A program made the translations under genes and the position numbers. The notes under the pieces were generated by a model, which made no database searches, was not told where the DNA came from, and saw nothing but the letters and a program-made list of their open reading frames with translations. Below are positions 50,293-56,900 of a DNA stretch of 64,000 bases, piece by piece. Location: the NCBI GenBank assembly GCA_964057225.1, contig OZ059897.1:9734001-9798000 (forward strand), given 5' to 3'. This DNA is from Auanema rhodensis (lineage: Eukaryota > Animalia > Nematoda). Each line of letters begins with the position of its first letter. Positions within the stretch are counted from its first letter, which is position 1.

Positions 50293-51981
50293 CTATGGTT
50301 TGAAAACTAAACTATCAATATTTTCTATTGCTTGCTTTGGACTATCTTTAAATAGTAAAAAGTGGCCCTGCAAAGTTGCGGGAGAAATCTCGATATTGAA
50401 TTTTTGAATTTTCGCCAGAAGATCTTCAGTTAGCTGTTCTGTAGCTTCATTACTATAGAACTTTGTAAACATCTACAAAAACAGAGTATAACATTGACAA
50501 TAAGCACGTCACTAACCCTTCTAATCATTATTTCAGAAAGATTTCCAAAATATTTTTTGACATCAATTCTGCCCGGTCTGATTAGGGCCTTGTCAAGCTT
50601 GTCGATGTAATTAGTTGTCATAAAGATAACTCTCTCTTCCGCGCTTCCTACGCCATCTATGGCATTAAGTAGACCCGATAAGGTTACTCTAACAACAATT
50701 AAAACATATAAACAAACTATTTTGGAATTTTTAAAACCTAGCTAATCCTTGATAAGCAGGATGATTGTTCATGGGATCATCTCGACTAGAAAATGCAGCA
50801 TCTATATCTTCTAAAATTATTATACTATTTGGAGGAGCAGTATTTATTAAATGATTTAGTCTAAATAAATCAATTTAAATCAGTTTCATAAGAATATCTA
50901 ACCTATCATCATCCAAGGTTCTTTCACTAAGTGATAGCATACATACACTGTATCCGAAATGACTAGCAAGAGCAGATATAAAACTACTTTTCCCCGTACC
51001 CGGTGGACCATAGAAAAGATAACCTCTTCGATAGGGAACACCTCTATCTGCATACCTTAATAATTGTTTTCGTCTGAACACACGCTATTGAATGTGTACC
51101 ATGAAGCGGAATCAAAGAATTGCTTCAAATCCGACAAAAGTTCTTCGGCAATATTTGAATCTAAGACTACAGAATCAACCTCTCTTTTTCGTCGTGGCAT
51201 TCCAAACCGAACCCATTGCGGACCAATTGCTTGATATATTACTAATCCCGTTTGAGCCTTTAAAACAGCATTCATATACGTCAAAAAATGAAGTACCAAC
51301 ATGGGAAACTCCCTCAAGCGTAGCATTTTTTAGCATATCTTGTAAAAACTTCGGATCCGTTCCCAAAGTTGACAAAGTAACTGTTTCAAATGGTGTCCGA
51401 TTTCCACCGGCTTGTTGCACAGTATGCTTTTCACGTTGTCTTTCCACTTTAATCCATCTTTAAAATTTATCAGATATAAGTAAGGGGAATATGTATTACC
51501 TATAACTATGAACAAAAAAATGTTGACCATGTCCGGGAAGATAAGACACATTTACGGCAGTTTTTCCACTCTCCGTTTGACTTATATTAGTTGACACAGA
51601 TAACTTGCGCGTTTGGGAAGCGCTTTTTCGATTTACAAAGTCAAGAAGCCATTGATACGATCTATAGAAGAGCAAACTTAGAGAAACCTATTGATTTCTT
51701 ACGGATCTTGATTATTAATTTCAAGTGAAATGATGAATTTCCTTCGGAAAACGGTATTAGCTATGATAGAAAACTTCTTCAAGACCCCCATGGCCAAGCC
51801 TATCAAATTTAACAGTATATTTATTTTCCTTGGGATGCCTACCCATTCCAGCTAACCCAGCTCCAGCATTGAAATAAGGGTTGCTAGTGAGACTATCAGA
51901 TAATTTATCAAAAAAAGAATTACTAGAAGAGGGAACAGCTAGTGCATCATTTACAATATTTCTAGGTTTAGTATCTACCAT
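50293..51981 (-). CDS. bcs-1: Mitochondrial chaperone BCS1 (AAA ATPase; Rieske Fe-S protein insertion into complex III)
   Basis: [47 protein letters not shown] (Walker A), ILEDIDAAF (Walker B), [42 protein letters not shown]; TAG at 50295-50293. Confidence 0.97.
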
Positions 51982-52235
51982 TTTGCAAGCTCCTAAAAAA
52001 TTTACTAAGCTATATTAGTAAAAATATACCCACCTTCTTTTCAGCTTACAACAAAATTTGTTACGTGAGGTTAAAAATGCAAACGAAAATTTTTTCAAAA
52101 TTTAATAGTATTTTTGTTGCGACGATAGTTTTTCAAGTTTTTAAACGAAATCTTGTATATCTTTTAATTTTGTATATTGGATGACTTAGTTATATTTTCA
52201 TTGATTTCTATTTCCGGTAGTTGGTATCTAACTGA

Positions 52236-52601
52236 ATGTCATCTGTTATTAACCGCTCGGTGTGGTTGAAATTATATAAAGAACTGCAATCCGAAGCTAA
52301 GAGAGTATGCTCTTTCTTATATGAAAAATGAGTAACGTCAGTTTTAGCTTCCACAATACAACTATCGTCTTTTTGCTCAACGTCGCATAAGAGATCACTT
52401 CGAGAAAAATCGTCAGGTAACCGACCCAGCTGTTCTTCAATCTTTGTTAGAGGTATATCTTAAATCTTATACCAGTTACTGATATCAGTATAGAAAGGAA
52501 AGGAAAGCCTGAATACTCTTCGCAGACAAGCCACGATCGGTCATTTGTTCCCCCATCAGCAAACTATTGTTGAATCTAAAATTTCTTTATCATCCCATTA
52601 A
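52236..52601 (+). CDS. LYRM4: LYR-motif protein 4 / ISD11 (NFS1 partner in Fe-S cluster assembly), 93 aa, 3 exons; absent from the ORF track
   Basis: Exons 52236-52304, 52348-52452 and 52494-52601 give MSSVINRSVWLKLYKELQSEAKR|LPQYNYRLFAQRRIRDHFEKNRQVTDPAVLQSLLE|KGKESLNTLRRQATIGHLFPHQQTIVESKISLSSH*. LYK (LYR variant), YNYRxxAxRRIRDxF and LRRQxxIGxL are the ISD11 signatures. Confidence 0.9.
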
Positions 52602-52612
52602 ATCTGCTCAAA

Positions 52613-53855
52613 ATGAGGGAGTGCTCGAAGTGTAAGTCGAGTGAATACACTAATAAAAATCTAGTTATGATGATCAATGAGTGTGGTCATCCTTTGTGCA
52701 AGTAAGTATTTACATTAAATGCGAGAATTAAATTATATTAATTTAGAAATTGTGTAGATAATCTTTTTGCCCGTAACGCAGGCCCATGCCATATGTGTGG
52801 GAGAACTTTAAAAAAAAATAATTTTTGGGAACAGATTTTCGACGATCCTATAATTGAAAAAGAAAACCATATTCGTAAACGCCTGAAAAAGGTACTCTAT
52901 TCTTTTCTCGTTTGGTTTTCTCATTGTTGATTATTATTTTAGATTTACAACCTGAAGCTAGAAGACTTCCCTTCTCTTCGTGACTTCAATGATTATTTGG
53001 AAAGGTAAGTTAGTTTTATTTTTCAAAAGAATACATTCATTTCAGGTTTGAACATATTGTTTTTAATTTGACTGAAGAGATTGATGTTGAACAAACTGAA
53101 GCAGAAGTTAATGCCTTCCGTGAGGGAAACTCTGAGCTCATTGAAAGAAATAGAAGAAAGTTTGTTTAGTATTTACAGAATTTCACTCTATCCATATATT
53201 CAGGAATGATGGTGATACTCTGTGGGTTTTGGAAAATCTTAAAGAAGAACGAGATATGAAAAACCGCATGTCTACTGTTCATCAACAAGAAAACGTTTAT
53301 AAAAATACTTTTTTTTTAGTATTAAATGTCCGGTTTCAGAAAGAAGTTGAGCTTACTGCTGTTCGTGATACTAAGGCTATTATCGACGAGATCAAAGATT
53401 CTGATGTGCCTGCTGAAGTTATTCTTGATCGAGAAAGAAAACGTCAGATTGAAATTGATATGGAAGAAAAGGAGAAAGCCGCTGATCGCAAGCGTAGACA
53501 GAAAGGTAGTATTGTTATATATCTCGATCAACCGTATCTCTCATCTTTTCCAGAAGCTCAAAGTCACAGAAGACCTGCCGAATTATCATTTGGACATCAA
53601 GCTCAGAGAGTTCCCGGTCGATCCTACGAATATTGTCCTATACGTCTTGTATACAACGGTCCTCCACTCATTCATCGCGATATACTAGAATCTAAGGGAT
53701 ATCTTTCTCATATCAAAGCACCCAGCAAAGTTAGTTTCAGCGTTGTTAAAATATTTATTATGAATTTGTAGCATCGTCTTGCTGGTGGTTACACAGCTCA
53801 TATGGGCCTAGAACGAGCACTTTTCGAGAGCAGAGTAGATCTTTTATCTTTTTAG
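52613..53855 (+). CDS. mnat-1: CDK-activating kinase assembly factor MAT1 (TFIIH/CAK)
   Basis: N-terminal C3HC4 RING MRECSKCK...NECGHPLCK|NCVDNLF...GPCHMCGRTL, then FDDPIIEKENHIRKR, DFPSLRDFNDYLE, and C-terminal LAGGYT...RALFES; TAG 53853-53855. Confidence 0.96.
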
Positions 53856-53969
53856 ATGTTAACCTTTTTCATAAATATTTTCCCGTATTTTGTTATTTTA
53901 TCATACATGTTTTGAGCAATGCGATATTTCAACCTATTGTCGAATATGAAACTCACTTTGTTCATATAG
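53856..53969 (+). promoter_or_regulatory. Operon-type intercistronic region (variant poly(A) signal CATAAA, U-rich tract, candidate trans-splice acceptor ending at 53969)
   Basis: Same-strand genes with the MAT1 stop and the transportin-SR ATG 138 nt apart; CATAAA at ~53870; T-rich tract; ttgttcatatAG acceptor. This fits the ~100-nt spacing of SL2-type nematode operons. Confidence 0.6.
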
Positions 53970-53993
53970 GCTCCACGGGTTCATGATAGAGTG

Positions 53994-56900
53994 ATGTCTG
54001 ACATAGAAGAAGCTTATAAGTATATAGAAATATTTTACAATGGTAATGACCCATCAGGACGAACTGAAGGTCAGCGATGGTTAACCGAATTTTCCAATTC
54101 CGTAAGCTCTTTTATAATTAGCAGATTGGGACCGTCATATTATTTTAGCTTCAAGCATGGACAATATGTGATCGTATTTTACATGATAGAAAGAGTAATC
54201 TGCATTGTTGGGTTGCTGCCCAAACAATTCGACAGAAAATTCTGAAATCACTTAAGGAAATTCCAGAAGAAAGTTTCTTGTCTCTTAGAGAATCATTAAT
54301 TAATCATATTGGGTGAATAGTGTTTATGTTTACAAATTGGAACTCTAGCTTTCAGTTATTTCCATTCGGCCACTGGTAGTGATCAAATTGAATCCATTGT
54401 TACCCAACTTTGTCTGGCTATTGCTGATTTGTACATTCAAGTTCCATCCTGGAATAATTGGATAGTTGAATTTCTTCAAAGGTTTGTATAGCTTATATCC
54501 CGGTTTTTGAATGTACTTTATAGATGCAATAACTTCGAAGGGGATCAAACAAAAATGATGTTAACGTTGCTTAAAGTTTTTCCAGAAGAAGTTCAAGAAA
54601 TAAGAGTGGGTGATAATCGAAGAAAAGTTATACAGGACGAACTAGCGAGCAGTGCTCCTCATGTTATTGAATATTTGGTGATATTATTTATTTGTTTGCT
54701 GTTTTAACCTATGTTTGTGTAGACTACTTTACTCAGCCATAATCCAAATCAGGATACATTTAAAAGAATATATAGCTGCTTAGGAGCCTACCTGGGTAAC
54801 CCCGCTATGTCGACTGATACATTCGTCAACAGTCCTTTGCTTCAAACAGCTTTTGTCATTATAGTGAGTTTATTGATCATTATTCTATTATATTGTTTCG
54901 AAAAATTTAAGGCTATGCCTAATGTCAGTACCACATTACACGACACGGTCACAGAATGTATTGTACAAGCAACTTTGTTAGCTGATAACTATTGTGATCA
55001 TTTGGCATTAGCACATTCTCTTCAAAAATCAATCTTCAGTTTAGCTGAACCTTTCAATGTAGCCGTAAGCTTAGAAGAATTTGGAAAGTAATATTTTTGT
55101 TTTTTTTATATCATTTAGTTTATATGTTTAAGATTGCAAAATTTTGCCCGTTTATTCTGTGAATTAACGGAAACTTTATTGGAAAAAATTGTAAACGAAA
55201 CATCTGATAATATAGATGATTTGGGCAGTTTACATTCTTTAGATTTATTATTGTTATTAGCTGGTCATCATGATTATGCGGTATTATCATTTATAATATA
55301 TAGCATTCATGTTAATTAATTTAGCTTATTGAACGAACATTTAACGTTTGGTATAGGATATCAGAAGCCTTATTCATGATTGAAGATGATTGCCATATTG
55401 GTAAATTCCGTCCATATATCAATAGGTATCTGACAAGTATTATATTGCATTACATGTCTCTATTATTAGATATATTTCTACCTTGTACCGTCACTCGAGA
55501 TTTGATACCGATGAGGAAGGGTTACCAGATGAAAATTCTGATTTTATGGAGTTTCGAGCAAAAGTATTTTTCCTTTTTTTTTATGTGTTGATTATAACTT
55601 TTTCTAGGTATCGGAAACACTGAAGGATGTTGTCTATATTGTTGGAACAGATACGGCTGTTCGTAATGTATGCTTGTTTCATAACATTGAATTTGCTTCA
55701 TGAAATAATTGTAGATGTGTGATATTCTGACATCTTGTTCAAATGGAACTTGGGATGAAATGGAATCAGCCCTCTTCTTGATTAGCAGCGTAGTTCATAA
55801 TCTTGTTCCGTAAGATATTTAAGAGTATATGCTATTTAACATATTATTTCAGGGAAGAGGATTCAGTTCTTCCTCAACTGATGACTTCGATAACGAATCT
55901 ACCATCTAATTCCCATCCTATTCTATTTGCTACTTCTATTAAGTTATTGGGCGCTTGCAATGAATGGCTTAGTAAGCATTCAGAGTACGTGGGTAAGTTG
56001 CATGTTAGCTGATTGGTTTAATTTATATGTTAAAATATCCTAAATTCAGTTGTTTTATAGCGCTACTGTAATTTGTATTTTTATAGAAGTTGTTGTCAAT
56101 TGGCTGGGCTCACTGATAAATAATCCATTATTTGCCCCTATTTGTGCTGAAGCTATCTATGAGGTTTTCGAGTTTATTTTTTGTTATTTAATAATTAATT
56201 TTTTAGATATCTTTAAAATGCCACAAGCAGATGATGGGCCATCTGCCTAGCCTGGTGGCGATTATTCCTGCACTTGAAAGTCATCCATCACATGGAAAGA
56301 AGATTGAAAAAGCTGTGTGTGAACTTTTAAAAAGTAAGTTTTTCTTTTTTATTTGTTTTTATTACGATATTGTAGCTATTTGTATGATTATTCCTAACCT
56401 ACACCCTGATGAAATATCCATGCGAATTGGTGTTATGTGCAAGCCTATTATCGAAAGACTTCTTGGGGTAGACAACTTTATTTGTTCATTTATTTTCAAT
56501 TATTTTAATTTTGTAGATCATTGCGAATTCTAACAATCCTGCCAATAATGAAAATGATAAACGGAACGATTCATGGATTCGTATATCTCAAGATCCAATT
56601 CTGTGGCTGAATCGTATTGCTATTGTTTTCAAAGATGTTCCTCCTTGGCAGGTATTTTAGAGGCTTCTTGTTCACGCTTTATAAATGCTGTTTAGAAACT
56701 CAATAATAATCCTACTATACCTGCCCCGTGGTTGGAAACATCCCATGCTCTATTCGATGTTGTATCTGCAACGCTTAATCATTACAAGCATAAAACTAGA
56801 GTTACTGAATATTGTTGTAGAGCTTTGAGGTAATAACATCAGCATGAATCCTTTAGTATAGTTCCTTCAATAGGTATATTATTCGTTCACTTGGTTTGCA

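What the first reader, a model, noticed from the sequence alone, without database searches (positions are those of the whole stretch)
52236..52700. LYRM4/ISD11 and MAT1 look like a true dicistronic mRNA: 11-nt spacer, ATG-free upstream ORF, weak-then-strong start codons
Seen: the LYRM4 stop (52599-52601) and the MAT1 ATG (52613) are separated by only atctgctcaaa (11 nt), which has no AG and no poly(A) signal. The normal nematode operon route (3' cleavage plus SL2 trans-splicing ~100 nt later) therefore cannot separate them there. The spacer puts the ORFs in different frames, so stop read-through would not give a fusion. The spliced LYRM4 sequence from its ATG to the MAT1 ATG (~290 nt) has no other ATG in any frame; my rough composition estimate expects 4-5, and the 43-nt first intron alone has three. 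LYRM4 starts in a poor context (actgaATG, T at -3) while MAT1 has the preferred caaaATG. Known: internal-AUG depletion and a weak first start characterise leaky-scanning bicistronic mRNAs, and human MIEF1 mRNA carries an LYR-motif microprotein as its upstream ORF. Inference: one mature mRNA makes both an Fe-S assembly factor and a TFIIH/CAK subunit. MAT1 binds the Fe-S helicase XPD, so the coupling could be functional. Alternative: MAT1 mRNA arises by trans-splicing onto the last LYRM4 intron acceptor (52493) or onto ccatcAG at ~52559, which would itself be an unusual mutually exclusive operon.
Basis: partly seen in the sequence, partly recalled or inferred. Interest (0 to 1): 0.85.

Follow-up and report, generated by a model that had tools for sequence, protein, structure and literature searches.

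The report
LYRM4–MAT1 two-protein mRNA in nematodes
In this roundworm a small mitochondrial iron-sulfur assembly protein (LYRM4/ISD11) and the transcription/cell-cycle factor MAT1 sit 11 bases apart on one spliced RNA, and the sequence carries the marks of ribosomes skipping the first start to reach the second; the layout is kept across the phylum and had been noted in passing in C. elegans.

Summary
A 93-aa LYRM4 ORF stops at 52599-52601. An 11-nt spacer with no AG, ATG or poly(A) signal follows, and the MAT1 ATG is at 52613. None of the 293 nt between the two starts holds an ATG.

In four runs of one study, a single fully spliced contig covers both ORFs.

The pair is kept in 11 nematode lineages of clades III-V, with spacers from -4 to 103 nt. 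It is also adjacent in a clade I genome.
- Ten of the 11 have no ATG between the two starts. Shuffles of ten lineages expect about 34.
- All 11 have a pyrimidine at -3 of the LYRM4 start and an A at -3 of the MAT1 start.
- No nematode LYRM4 has an internal Met.
- One foreign contig carries a complete SL1 leader, both ORFs and a 3'UTR.

Best reading: a true dicistronic mRNA translated by leaky scanning. Single-molecule and translation evidence are still missing.

The C. elegans orthologue (F53G2.12/mnat-1) was noted in one sentence in 2015, so this is a new member of a known kind. Earlier unchecked notes of this scan list other tight gene pairs in the same genome.

The parts
52189..52235 (+). 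5'UTR of the dicistronic mRNA. It is ATG-free. Contigs start at 52189 (run X1) or about 52216 (X2-X4). A TATA-like TTATATTT lies at 52190-52197.
52236..52304 (+). LYRM4/ISD11 exon 1. The start codon at 52236 is in a weak context (T at -3).
   Evidence: (joint 52304>52348)
52305..52347 (+). LYRM4 intron 1 (43 nt, GT..AG). It contains three ATGs, unlike the exons.
52348..52452 (+). LYRM4 exon 2
52453..52493 (+). LYRM4 intron 2 (41 nt). Its acceptor at 52493 is the most plausible site for any alternative internal trans-splicing.
52494..52601 (+). LYRM4 exon 3 with stop TAA at 52599-52601. It is continuous with the spacer and MAT1 exon 1, so they form one exon.
52602..52612 (+). Intercistronic spacer ATCTGCTCAAA (11 nt). 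It has no AG, no ATG and no poly(A) signal.
52613..53855 (+). MAT1 (mnat-1 orthologue) coding region, 308 aa. Exons: 52613-52701, 52747-52891, 52943-53004, 53046-53159, 53204-53294, 53340-53505, 53554-53729, 53772-53855. The start is in a strong context (A at -3).
53856..53887 (+). Short 3'UTR with CATAAA at 53870-53875. RNA contigs end at 53882-53887.
53888..53969 (+). Operon-type intercistronic region of about 85 nt. It ends in the acceptor tatAG at 53968-53969, ahead of the TNPO3/IPO13-like gene (ATG 53994). The downstream gene's contigs begin exactly at this AG in two runs.

Best explanation
LYRM4 (ISD11, the partner of the mitochondrial cysteine desulfurase NFS1) and MAT1 (the CDK7/cyclin H assembly factor of CAK/TFIIH) are the two cistrons of one mature, capped mRNA. 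No processing occurs between them.

Proposed mechanism: 40S subunits load at the 5' end. Some start at the LYRM4 AUG, which sits in a poor context with a pyrimidine at -3. The rest scan on through about 290 nt that selection keeps free of any AUG, and they start at the MAT1 AUG, which has an A at -3. The ratio of the two proteins would then be set by how leaky the first start is.

The unit is ancient in nematodes. Here it is also the first 'gene' of a conventional operon whose next member, a TNPO3/IPO13-like importin, appears to be separated by normal 3'-end formation and trans-splicing.

Shown: the anatomy, co-linear spliced RNA contigs, the conservation, the ATG depletion and the start contexts. 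Inferred: that single molecules carry both ORFs, that MAT1 is translated from them, and that leaky scanning is the route.
For: 1. RNA in this species. Each of four runs has one contig of 1270-1294 nt. All two LYRM4 and seven MAT1 introns are removed, and the contig runs unbroken through the spacer. It spans 52189 or about 52216 to 53882-53887.

2. RNA in other species.
- A Logan contig, L018, reads complete SL1, 9 nt, LYRM4, a 24-nt spacer, MAT1 and a 3'UTR.
- C. elegans contig L007 starts with the 3' part of SL1, 14 nt before the LYRM4 AUG, and continues through mnat-1. Nine C. elegans contigs from different runs span both ORFs.
- L002, L017, L020 and L021 also span both ORFs.

3. Shared exon in C. 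elegans. The last 8 nt of the LYRM4 CDS, the 44-nt spacer and the first coding exon of mnat-1 are one exon.

4. ATG depletion.
- Ten of 11 lineages have no ATG from the LYRM4 AUG to the MAT1 AUG. This includes spacers of 100 and 103 nt.
- Dinucleotide shuffles of ten lineages expect 34 in total; two are observed, both in the Onchocerca spacer.
- The MAT1 CDS of the same mRNAs has 1.6-3.3 ATG per 100 nt.
- The depletion covers the first two exons too.

5. Start contexts. The -3 position is C or T at 11 of 11 LYRM4 starts and A at 11 of 11 MAT1 starts.

6. No internal Met. None of the nematode LYRM4 proteins has one. A sample of 72 LYRM4 representatives averages 1.67, and 22% have none.

7. Independence of lineages. 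dS is 1.5 even against the closest relative, and dN/dS is 0.10. The lineages are therefore near-independent at silent sites, and the small ORF is under protein-level selection.

8. Spacer lengths are not conserved modulo 3, so a fusion protein is excluded.

9. There is no Rfam match and no excess RNA structure upstream of MAT1; z runs from -0.5 to +1.6.

10. The same signature (weak ORF1 context and ATG depletion before ORF2) was shown by mutation to mean leaky scanning in green algae (PMC11291117).
Against: - Contigs are assembled from short reads and cannot prove that one molecule carries both ORFs or exclude minor isoforms. The tool itself warns of this.
- All four runs come from one study, and their RNA nature is inferred from the spliced contigs.
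- No ribosome or protein data were examined.
- Given the amino-acid sequence, few out-of-frame ATGs are possible. The synonymous-resampling expectation is only 0-1.5 per gene. Much of the depletion is therefore written into the protein sequence and is partly inherited.
- A 93-codon first cistron followed by seven exon junctions might be expected to trigger mRNA surveillance.
- Internal acceptors exist: 52493 here, and in C. elegans the acceptor of the shared exon plus TTTTCAAG just before the mnat-1 ATG. These could give a separate SL-capped MAT1 mRNA.
- In Soboliphyme baturini the LYRM4 has an internal Met and MAT1 has no ATG at the conserved position.
Confidence: 0.7

Rival explanations
1. 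Two mRNAs from one transcription unit. The dicistronic RNA yields only LYRM4. Most MAT1 comes from a separate monocistronic mRNA, made either by SL trans-splicing onto an internal acceptor (52493 or the AG at 52558-52559) or from an internal promoter.
For: - AG dinucleotides and a genuine cis-acceptor lie upstream of the MAT1 ATG inside the LYRM4 last exon or intron.
- In C. elegans the shared exon starts at a TTTTTCAG acceptor only 52 nt before the mnat-1 ATG, and the spacer ends in TTTTCAAG|ATG.
- De Bruijn contigs drop minor SL-tipped branches, so cannot exclude such forms.
- Exon 3 plus the spacer is also ATG-free, so such an mRNA would be translatable.
Against: - ATG depletion, the absence of Met and the weak first AUG extend over the whole LYRM4 ORF, including exons 1-2. 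Those exons would be absent from such an mRNA and so would be free to carry ATGs.
- C. angaria has an intronless LYRM4 whose stop overlaps the MAT1 start as ATGA.
- The spacers of this species, of Auanema JU1783 and of B. okinawaensis (103 nt) contain no AG at all.
- None of the 20+ contigs inspected shows an SL joined inside LYRM4. SL1 is seen only at the LYRM4 5' end.
Confidence: 0.15
2. Termination-reinitiation. Ribosomes translate LYRM4, terminate, and the 40S subunit stays on the mRNA and restarts at the nearby MAT1 AUG.
For: - Stop and start are very close in several lineages. C. angaria has an overlapping ATGA.
- Onchocerca has two 3-codon mini-ORFs in the spacer that end just before the MAT1 AUG. 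Those would need reinitiation.
- ATG-free spacers suit rescanning.
Against: - By established knowledge of eukaryotic reinitiation, efficiency falls steeply beyond about 30 codons unless a dedicated element such as a calicivirus TURBS is present. LYRM4 is 89-94 codons.
- Reinitiation gives no reason to purge ATGs and Met codons from inside the translated first ORF, or to keep its start weak. Both are conserved.
- Spacers range from -4 to 103 nt.
- No conserved structure was detected.
Confidence: 0.08
3. Internal ribosome entry, or a read-through or frameshift fusion protein.
For: Several public gene models fuse LYR and MAT1 domains into one protein. These are from Onchocerca, Wuchereria, Mesorhabditis spiculigera, C. 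bovis and Soboliphyme.
Against: - The fusions examined bypass a real stop codon with an invented intron.
- Spacer lengths are not conserved modulo 3 and often contain further stops.
- An 11-nt or overlapping spacer leaves no room for an IRES.
- The upstream region is not unusually structured and matches no Rfam family.
Confidence: 0.02

Closest known systems
C. elegans F53G2.12 / mnat-1 (F53G2.7)
   Same: This is the orthologous locus. A 90-aa LYRM4-like ORF lies directly upstream of mnat-1 on the same spliced RNA. It has no internal ATG, a T at -3 of its start and an A at -3 of the mnat-1 start. [quoted passage not shown]
   Different: - The spacer is 44 nt, not 11.
- The last LYRM4 intron lies 8 nt before the stop.
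- No called gene is listed in the 2.5 kb held downstream of mnat-1, so TNPO3-like synteny is not seen there.
- I found no paper on the mechanism, the ATG depletion or the phylum-wide conservation.
Green-algal bicistronic mRNAs translated by leaky scanning (PMC7896298; PMC11291117)
   Same: Two unrelated proteins come from one mature mRNA. ORF1 is small with a weak Kozak-like context, and start codons are depleted before ORF2. The mechanism was demonstrated by mutating the ORF1 context.
   Different: The lineage is different. The algal depletion is partial (median observed/expected about 0.45), whereas here it is essentially complete. Nematodes also have SL2 trans-splicing to resolve polycistrons, and it is not used at this junction.
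Human MIEF1 mRNA with the upstream altMiD51/MIEF1-MP ORF
   Same: A roughly 70-aa LYR-motif mitochondrial matrix protein is encoded upstream of a larger ORF on the same mRNA (PMC11837024).
   Different: It is a different LYR protein, not LYRM4, with a different downstream partner. The origin is independent, and both human products are mitochondrial.
Nematode SL2-type and SL1-type operons
   Same: One promoter serves several genes. The MAT1 to TNPO3-like junction in this window looks like a normal SL2-type junction: CATAAA, a 3' end at 53882-53887, about 85 nt, then an AG acceptor.
   Different: The LYRM4 to MAT1 junction has no poly(A) signal and no acceptor AG, and spliced RNA runs straight through it. 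The two cistrons are not separated into monocistronic mRNAs. (Operon rules are quoted from general knowledge of C. elegans operons, not tested here.)
Animal dicistronic genes such as MOCS2A/MOCS2B and the FlyBase dicistronic set
   Same: Bicistronic mature mRNAs exist in animals, some with overlapping or closely spaced ORFs. They are cited in PMC5817353 and PMC4528330.
   Different: The gene pairs are unrelated. For none of them did I verify a comparably old and complete ATG purge.

Membership tests
Leaky-scanning dicistronic mRNA | Both ORFs lie on one mature, spliced mRNA with no processing site between them. | tested here: met
   A single fully spliced contig spans both ORFs in four runs. 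SL1-led contigs span both ORFs in other species. C. elegans has a shared exon. The spacer lacks AG and AATAAA. Caveat: this is contig-level evidence, not single molecules.
Leaky-scanning dicistronic mRNA | A weak initiation context at ORF1 and a stronger one at ORF2. | tested here: met
   The -3 position is a pyrimidine at 11 of 11 LYRM4 starts and an A at 11 of 11 MAT1 starts.
Leaky-scanning dicistronic mRNA | No AUG in any frame between the ORF1 start and the ORF2 start. | tested here: met
   There are 0 ATGs in 293 nt here. Ten of 11 lineages have none, and shuffles of ten lineages expect about 34. The exception is two mini-ORFs in the Onchocerca spacer.
Leaky-scanning dicistronic mRNA | ORF2 output responds inversely to the strength of the ORF1 start. 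| not testable with these tools
   This needs reporter or genome-edit experiments.
SL2-type nematode operon junction | A poly(A) signal, 3' cleavage, about 100 nt of U-rich spacer, then a trans-splice acceptor before the downstream ORF. | tested here: not met
   For LYRM4 to MAT1: the 11-nt spacer has no AG and no AATAAA, and RNA contigs pass through it. The feature is met for MAT1 to the TNPO3-like gene.
SL1-type operon (adjacent poly(A) and trans-splice sites) | A trans-splice acceptor at the very 5' end of the downstream gene, coinciding with the upstream 3' end. | tested here: not met
   There is no acceptor AG between the LYRM4 stop and the MAT1 ATG here, in Auanema JU1783 or in B. okinawaensis. 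The ORFs overlap in C. angaria.
Termination-reinitiation dicistron | A short upstream ORF or a dedicated tethering element, with stop and start adjacent or overlapping. | tested here: inconclusive
   Stop and start are adjacent, or overlap as ATGA in C. angaria. However, the ORF is 89-94 codons and the spacer reaches 103 nt. No conserved structure was seen. 18S complementarity was not examined.
LYRM4/ISD11 | A Complex1_LYR domain, with LYRM4 as the closest characterised relative over the full length. | tested here: met
   Pfam PF05347 at 4.7e-18. Human LYRM4 chains match at 8e-18 over residues 6-87, and the next family, NDUFA6, only at 3e-3. dN/dS is 0.10.
MAT1/MNAT1 | An N-terminal C3HC4 RING, a MAT1 central domain and a C-terminal CAK anchor. 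| tested here: met
   PF17121 at 2e-8, PF06391 at 1e-45 and PF25811 at 2e-13. Identity to C. elegans MNAT-1 is 56% over the full length.

The most novel reading that the evidence does not exclude
Nematodes are the textbook animals that resolve polycistronic transcripts by SL2 trans-splicing. They may also keep a phylum-wide class of translationally dicistronic mRNAs. In these, a small and often mitochondrial protein would be the ATG-purged first cistron, and leaky scanning would fix its ratio to an unrelated downstream protein. LYRM4-MAT1 would be the oldest and cleanest example. It is adjacent already in clade I and intact in clades III-V, and it might couple Fe-S cluster supply to TFIIH/CAK. 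The other tight pairs noted in this genome would be further members: LYRM1-EEF2KMT, COX14-SMIM4, TMEM242-PIGL and rpb-11-IWR1.
Probability: 0.35. Interest if true: 0.75.

Novelty: new member of a known kind. Interest (0 to 1): 0.55.

Why it matters
It gives a clean, evolutionarily validated animal example of a mature mRNA that encodes two unrelated essential proteins, in the phylum where polycistronic RNAs are thought always to be cut apart.

The signature is unusually complete: no AUG in about 300 nt in ten of eleven lineages, a weak first start and a strong second start in all eleven, and a Met-free first protein. The model can therefore be tested directly by editing F53G2.12/mnat-1 in C. 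elegans.

There is also a practical side. Public annotations mishandle the locus. MAT1 loses its RING in Auanema JU1783 and C. angaria, and LYR-MAT1 fusion proteins are invented in filarial and other species. Recognising the dicistron corrects those gene models.

Whether pairing an Fe-S assembly factor with a TFIIH/CAK subunit has functional meaning is open.

Tried and rejected
- Synonymous-codon resampling null. It showed that, given the protein sequence, only 0-1.5 out-of-frame ATGs per gene are expected. Out-of-frame depletion alone is therefore weak evidence. I rely on the combination of Met-free proteins, ATG-free spacers, codon-order and dinucleotide shuffles, and the MAT1 control.
- Drosophila bcn92 (LYRM4) being bicistronic. 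This was a recollection, and I found no support in the paper library, so I dropped it.
- Search for a paper on the mechanism at mnat-1/F53G2.12. Nothing turned up beyond one sentence in PMC4568590.
- SL sequences at the 5' ends of this species' contigs. None was found, so whether this mRNA is trans-spliced or starts at a TATA-directed site near 52216 is undecided.
- Rfam and folding. No family match and no excess structure.
- Fusion protein. Rejected, because the annotated fusions skip a real stop codon.
- The P. mayeri and O. flexuosa gene models are my own splice models without RNA support. P. mayeri needs a GC-AG intron.
I could not examine reads for internal SL use in C. elegans or add more lineages.
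Full report
**What is in the window.** The + strand at 52236-53855 holds two genes.
- The first gene has three exons: 52236-52304, 52348-52452 and 52494-52601. It encodes 93 aa.
  - Pfam gives Complex1_LYR at 4.7e-18.
  - The best solved relative is human LYRM4/ISD11 at 8e-18 over residues 6-87. The next LYR family, NDUFA6, scores only 3e-3.
- The second gene has eight exons, from 52613 to 53855, and encodes 308 aa with RING + MAT1 (1e-45) + CAK anchor. It is 56% identical to C. elegans MNAT-1.
- The LYRM4 stop is TAA at 52599-52601, the spacer is ATCTGCTCAAA, and the MAT1 ATG is at 52613.
- The spacer has no AG, no ATG and no AATAAA, and the two ORFs are in different frames.
- From the LYRM4 ATG to the MAT1 ATG the spliced RNA is 293 nt with no other ATG. 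The expectation is 4.5 by base composition and 3.6 by dinucleotide shuffle, with P(0)=0.011.
- Intron 1 alone has three ATGs. The 5'UTR from 52189 has none.
- The start contexts are aactgaATGt and ctcaaaATGa.

**RNA evidence in this species.** Four runs of one 2019 study hold about half the sampled words of 52100-54000.
- Laid on 51900-54500, each run gives one contig of 1270-1294 nt.
- In each contig both LYRM4 introns and all seven MAT1 introns are removed at GT..AG joints that match my models.
- Each contig runs uninterrupted through the spacer.
- The contigs start at 52189 (X1) or about 52216 (X2-X4). They end at 53882-53887, which is 7-12 nt after a CATAAA at 53870.
- The spliced joints show that the runs contain RNA.
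- Limits: these are assembled contigs from one study. They show a co-linear spliced form exists. They do not show that every molecule is dicistronic.
- The next gene is a TNPO3/IPO13-like importin, identified by synteny. It is on separate contigs that begin exactly at the AG of tatAG|gctcc (53968-53969) in two runs.
- The gap from the MAT1 3' end to that acceptor is about 85 nt, which is an ordinary operon junction. The locus is thus a dicistron sitting as the first unit of an operon.

**Comparative evidence.** The closest relative is Auanema sp. JU1783, with LYRM4 79% and MAT1 87% identical. LYRM4 lies directly upstream of MAT1 in the following.

| Lineage | Spacer (nt) |
|---|---|
| This window | 11 |
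| Auanema sp. JU1783 | 18 |
| RNA contig L002 (unnamed species) | 35 |
| Caenorhabditis angaria (ATGA overlap, intronless LYRM4) | -4 |
| C. elegans | 44 |
| RNA contig L018 | 24 |
| RNA contig L021 | 32 |
| Metatranscriptome contig L017 | 100 |
| Onchocerca flexuosa | 30 |
| Bursaphelenchus okinawaensis | 103 |
| Pristionchus mayeri (my model, with an intron inside the spacer) | about 36 |

- L020, a truncated contig, shows the LYRM4 C-terminus, a spacer of about 23 nt (hand count) and MAT1.
- Fused LYR+MAT1 gene models in Onchocerca, Wuchereria, Mesorhabditis spiculigera and C. bovis point to the same adjacency. So does a 1193-aa model named MAT1 in Aphelenchoides besseyi that clusters with that species' LYRM4.
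- In the clade I species Soboliphyme baturini, LYRM4 is also followed by MAT1 about 110 nt later.
- The pair is therefore conserved in clades III-V and is adjacent already in clade I.

**The leaky-scanning signature is conserved.**
- Ten of 11 lineages have no ATG between the two starts. Dinucleotide shuffles of ten lineages expect 34 in total.
- The only two ATGs observed are 3-codon mini-ORFs in the Onchocerca spacer.
- The two roughly 100-nt AT-rich spacers are ATG-free as well. The Bursaphelenchus spacer also lacks any AG.
- The MAT1 CDS of the same mRNAs carries 1.6-3.3 ATG per 100 nt.
- All 11 LYRM4 starts have C or T at -3, and all 11 MAT1 starts have A at -3.
- No nematode LYRM4 has an internal Met. 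A sample of 72 LYRM4-family representatives of 78-100 aa averages 1.67, and only 22% have none; some of those are themselves nematode.
- dS between the window and its closest relative is already 1.5, with dN/dS 0.10. The lineages are therefore close to independent at silent sites, and the small ORF is under protein-level constraint.
- Caveat: resampling synonymous codons on the fixed protein sequences gives only 0-1.5 expected out-of-frame ATGs per gene. Most of the avoidance is therefore encoded in the amino-acid sequence. It shows up as Met loss and avoidance of ATG-prone residue pairs, rather than in codon choice.

**Direct support for a capped dicistronic form in other species.**
- Contig L018 begins with the complete SL1 leader joined 9 nt before the LYRM4 AUG. 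It continues through both ORFs to a 3'UTR.
- C. elegans contig L007 begins with CAAGTTTGAG, the 3' part of SL1, 14 nt before the LYRM4 AUG. It continues through mnat-1.
- In C. elegans the last 8 nt of the LYRM4 CDS, the spacer and the first mnat-1 coding exon are a single exon.

**Mechanism and rivals.**
- The conserved weak first start, strong second start and purge of AUGs across the whole first cistron are what leaky scanning requires. In green-algal bicistrons the same features were tied to leaky scanning by mutation (PMC11291117).
- Internal trans-splicing onto 52493, or the equivalent C. elegans acceptor, cannot be excluded as a minor route. It would not explain the constraint on exons 1-2 or on the first AUG context. 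It is also impossible in the intronless, overlapping C. angaria arrangement.
- Termination-reinitiation fits the ATGA overlap and the Onchocerca mini-ORFs. It does not fit a 90-codon first ORF or the AUG purge.
- A fusion is excluded by variable spacer phase and real stop codons.
- An IRES is unlikely, given 11-nt or overlapping spacers, no Rfam hit and no excess structure.

**What is known.**
- Mackowiak et al. 2015 (PMC4568590) state in one sentence that a sORF in the 5'UTR of worm mnat-1 is homologous to mouse Lyrm4 and fly bcn92.
- The C. elegans ORF is now annotated as F53G2.12.
- I found no paper that treats the mechanism, the AUG purge or the phylum-wide conservation.
- A LYR-motif protein as an upstream cistron is also known from human MIEF1 (PMC11837024).
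- Earlier unchecked notes of this scan list other tight pairs in the same genome: rpb-11/IWR1, TMEM242/PIG-L, LYRM1/EEF2KMT and COX14/SMIM4. This hints at a class. I did not test them.

**Verdict.** This is a genuine and very old dicistronic unit, most likely read by leaky scanning. It is an orthologue of a C. elegans locus already noticed, so it counts as a new member of a known kind. The proposed link to the Fe-S helicase XPD remains speculation.

Noticed in passing
window 53856-53996: The MAT1 to TNPO3/IPO13-like junction looks like a standard SL2-type operon junction. CATAAA is at 53870, RNA 3' ends are at 53882-53887, and the acceptor AG is at 53968-53969. The downstream contigs start exactly at that AG in two runs, as expected if different SL variants branch there.
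   Followed up: partly
window 53983-53996: A 3-codon mini-uORF (ATGATAGAGTGA) lies in the 5'UTR of the TNPO3-like gene. Its stop shares a base with the main ATG (TGATG at 53992-53996).
   Followed up: no
L022 3001-3420 (Soboliphyme baturini): In this clade I species LYRM4 ends at a real TAG and has an internal Met at codon 8. The MAT1 reading frame has no ATG before its first RING cysteines. The public model bridges the stop with an atypical intron to give a 406-aa fusion. How MAT1 starts here is unexplained.
   Followed up: partly
L014 2480-2530 (Onchocerca flexuosa): The 30-nt spacer holds two 3-codon mini-ORFs, ATGACTCAGTAA and ATGAAAGTGTAA. The first overlaps the LYRM4 stop and the second ends 1 nt before the MAT1 ATG. 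The public model fuses LYRM4 and MAT1 into 373 aa.
   Followed up: partly
L001 4392-4481; L003 4270-4530: Public annotations of Auanema sp. JU1783 and C. angaria start MAT1 too late (289 and 292 aa) and lose the RING finger. The true ATG sits next to or inside the LYRM4 stop.
   Followed up: yes
L004 2168-2447; L015 2323-2465: Intron positions near the junction differ between lineages. C. elegans has a 280-nt intron 8 nt before the LYRM4 stop. P. mayeri appears to have an intron inside the intercistronic spacer, full of ATGs that splicing would remove, and also a probable GC-AG intron after LYRM4 exon 2. These are my models, with no RNA checked.
   Followed up: partly
L016 2398-2500 (Bursaphelenchus okinawaensis): The 103-nt AT-rich spacer contains neither ATG nor AG and only three G. 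Purging G is apparently how both start codons and splice acceptors are avoided.
   Followed up: no
window 51757-52235: A divergent gene on the - strand starts near 51981, and RNA contigs cover 51900 to about 52010. It shares an intergenic stretch of about 200 bp with the dicistron. A TATA-like TTATATTT at 52190-52197 lies about 25 nt before the 52216 contig starts, and the region 52210-52235 is identical in Auanema JU1783.
   Followed up: no
L019 1-60: A second contig of the L018 species lacks SL1. Instead it carries upstream sequence with two ATGs (CAATGGATAATGG), probably the unspliced outron. Trans-splicing removes these upstream ATGs.
   Followed up: no
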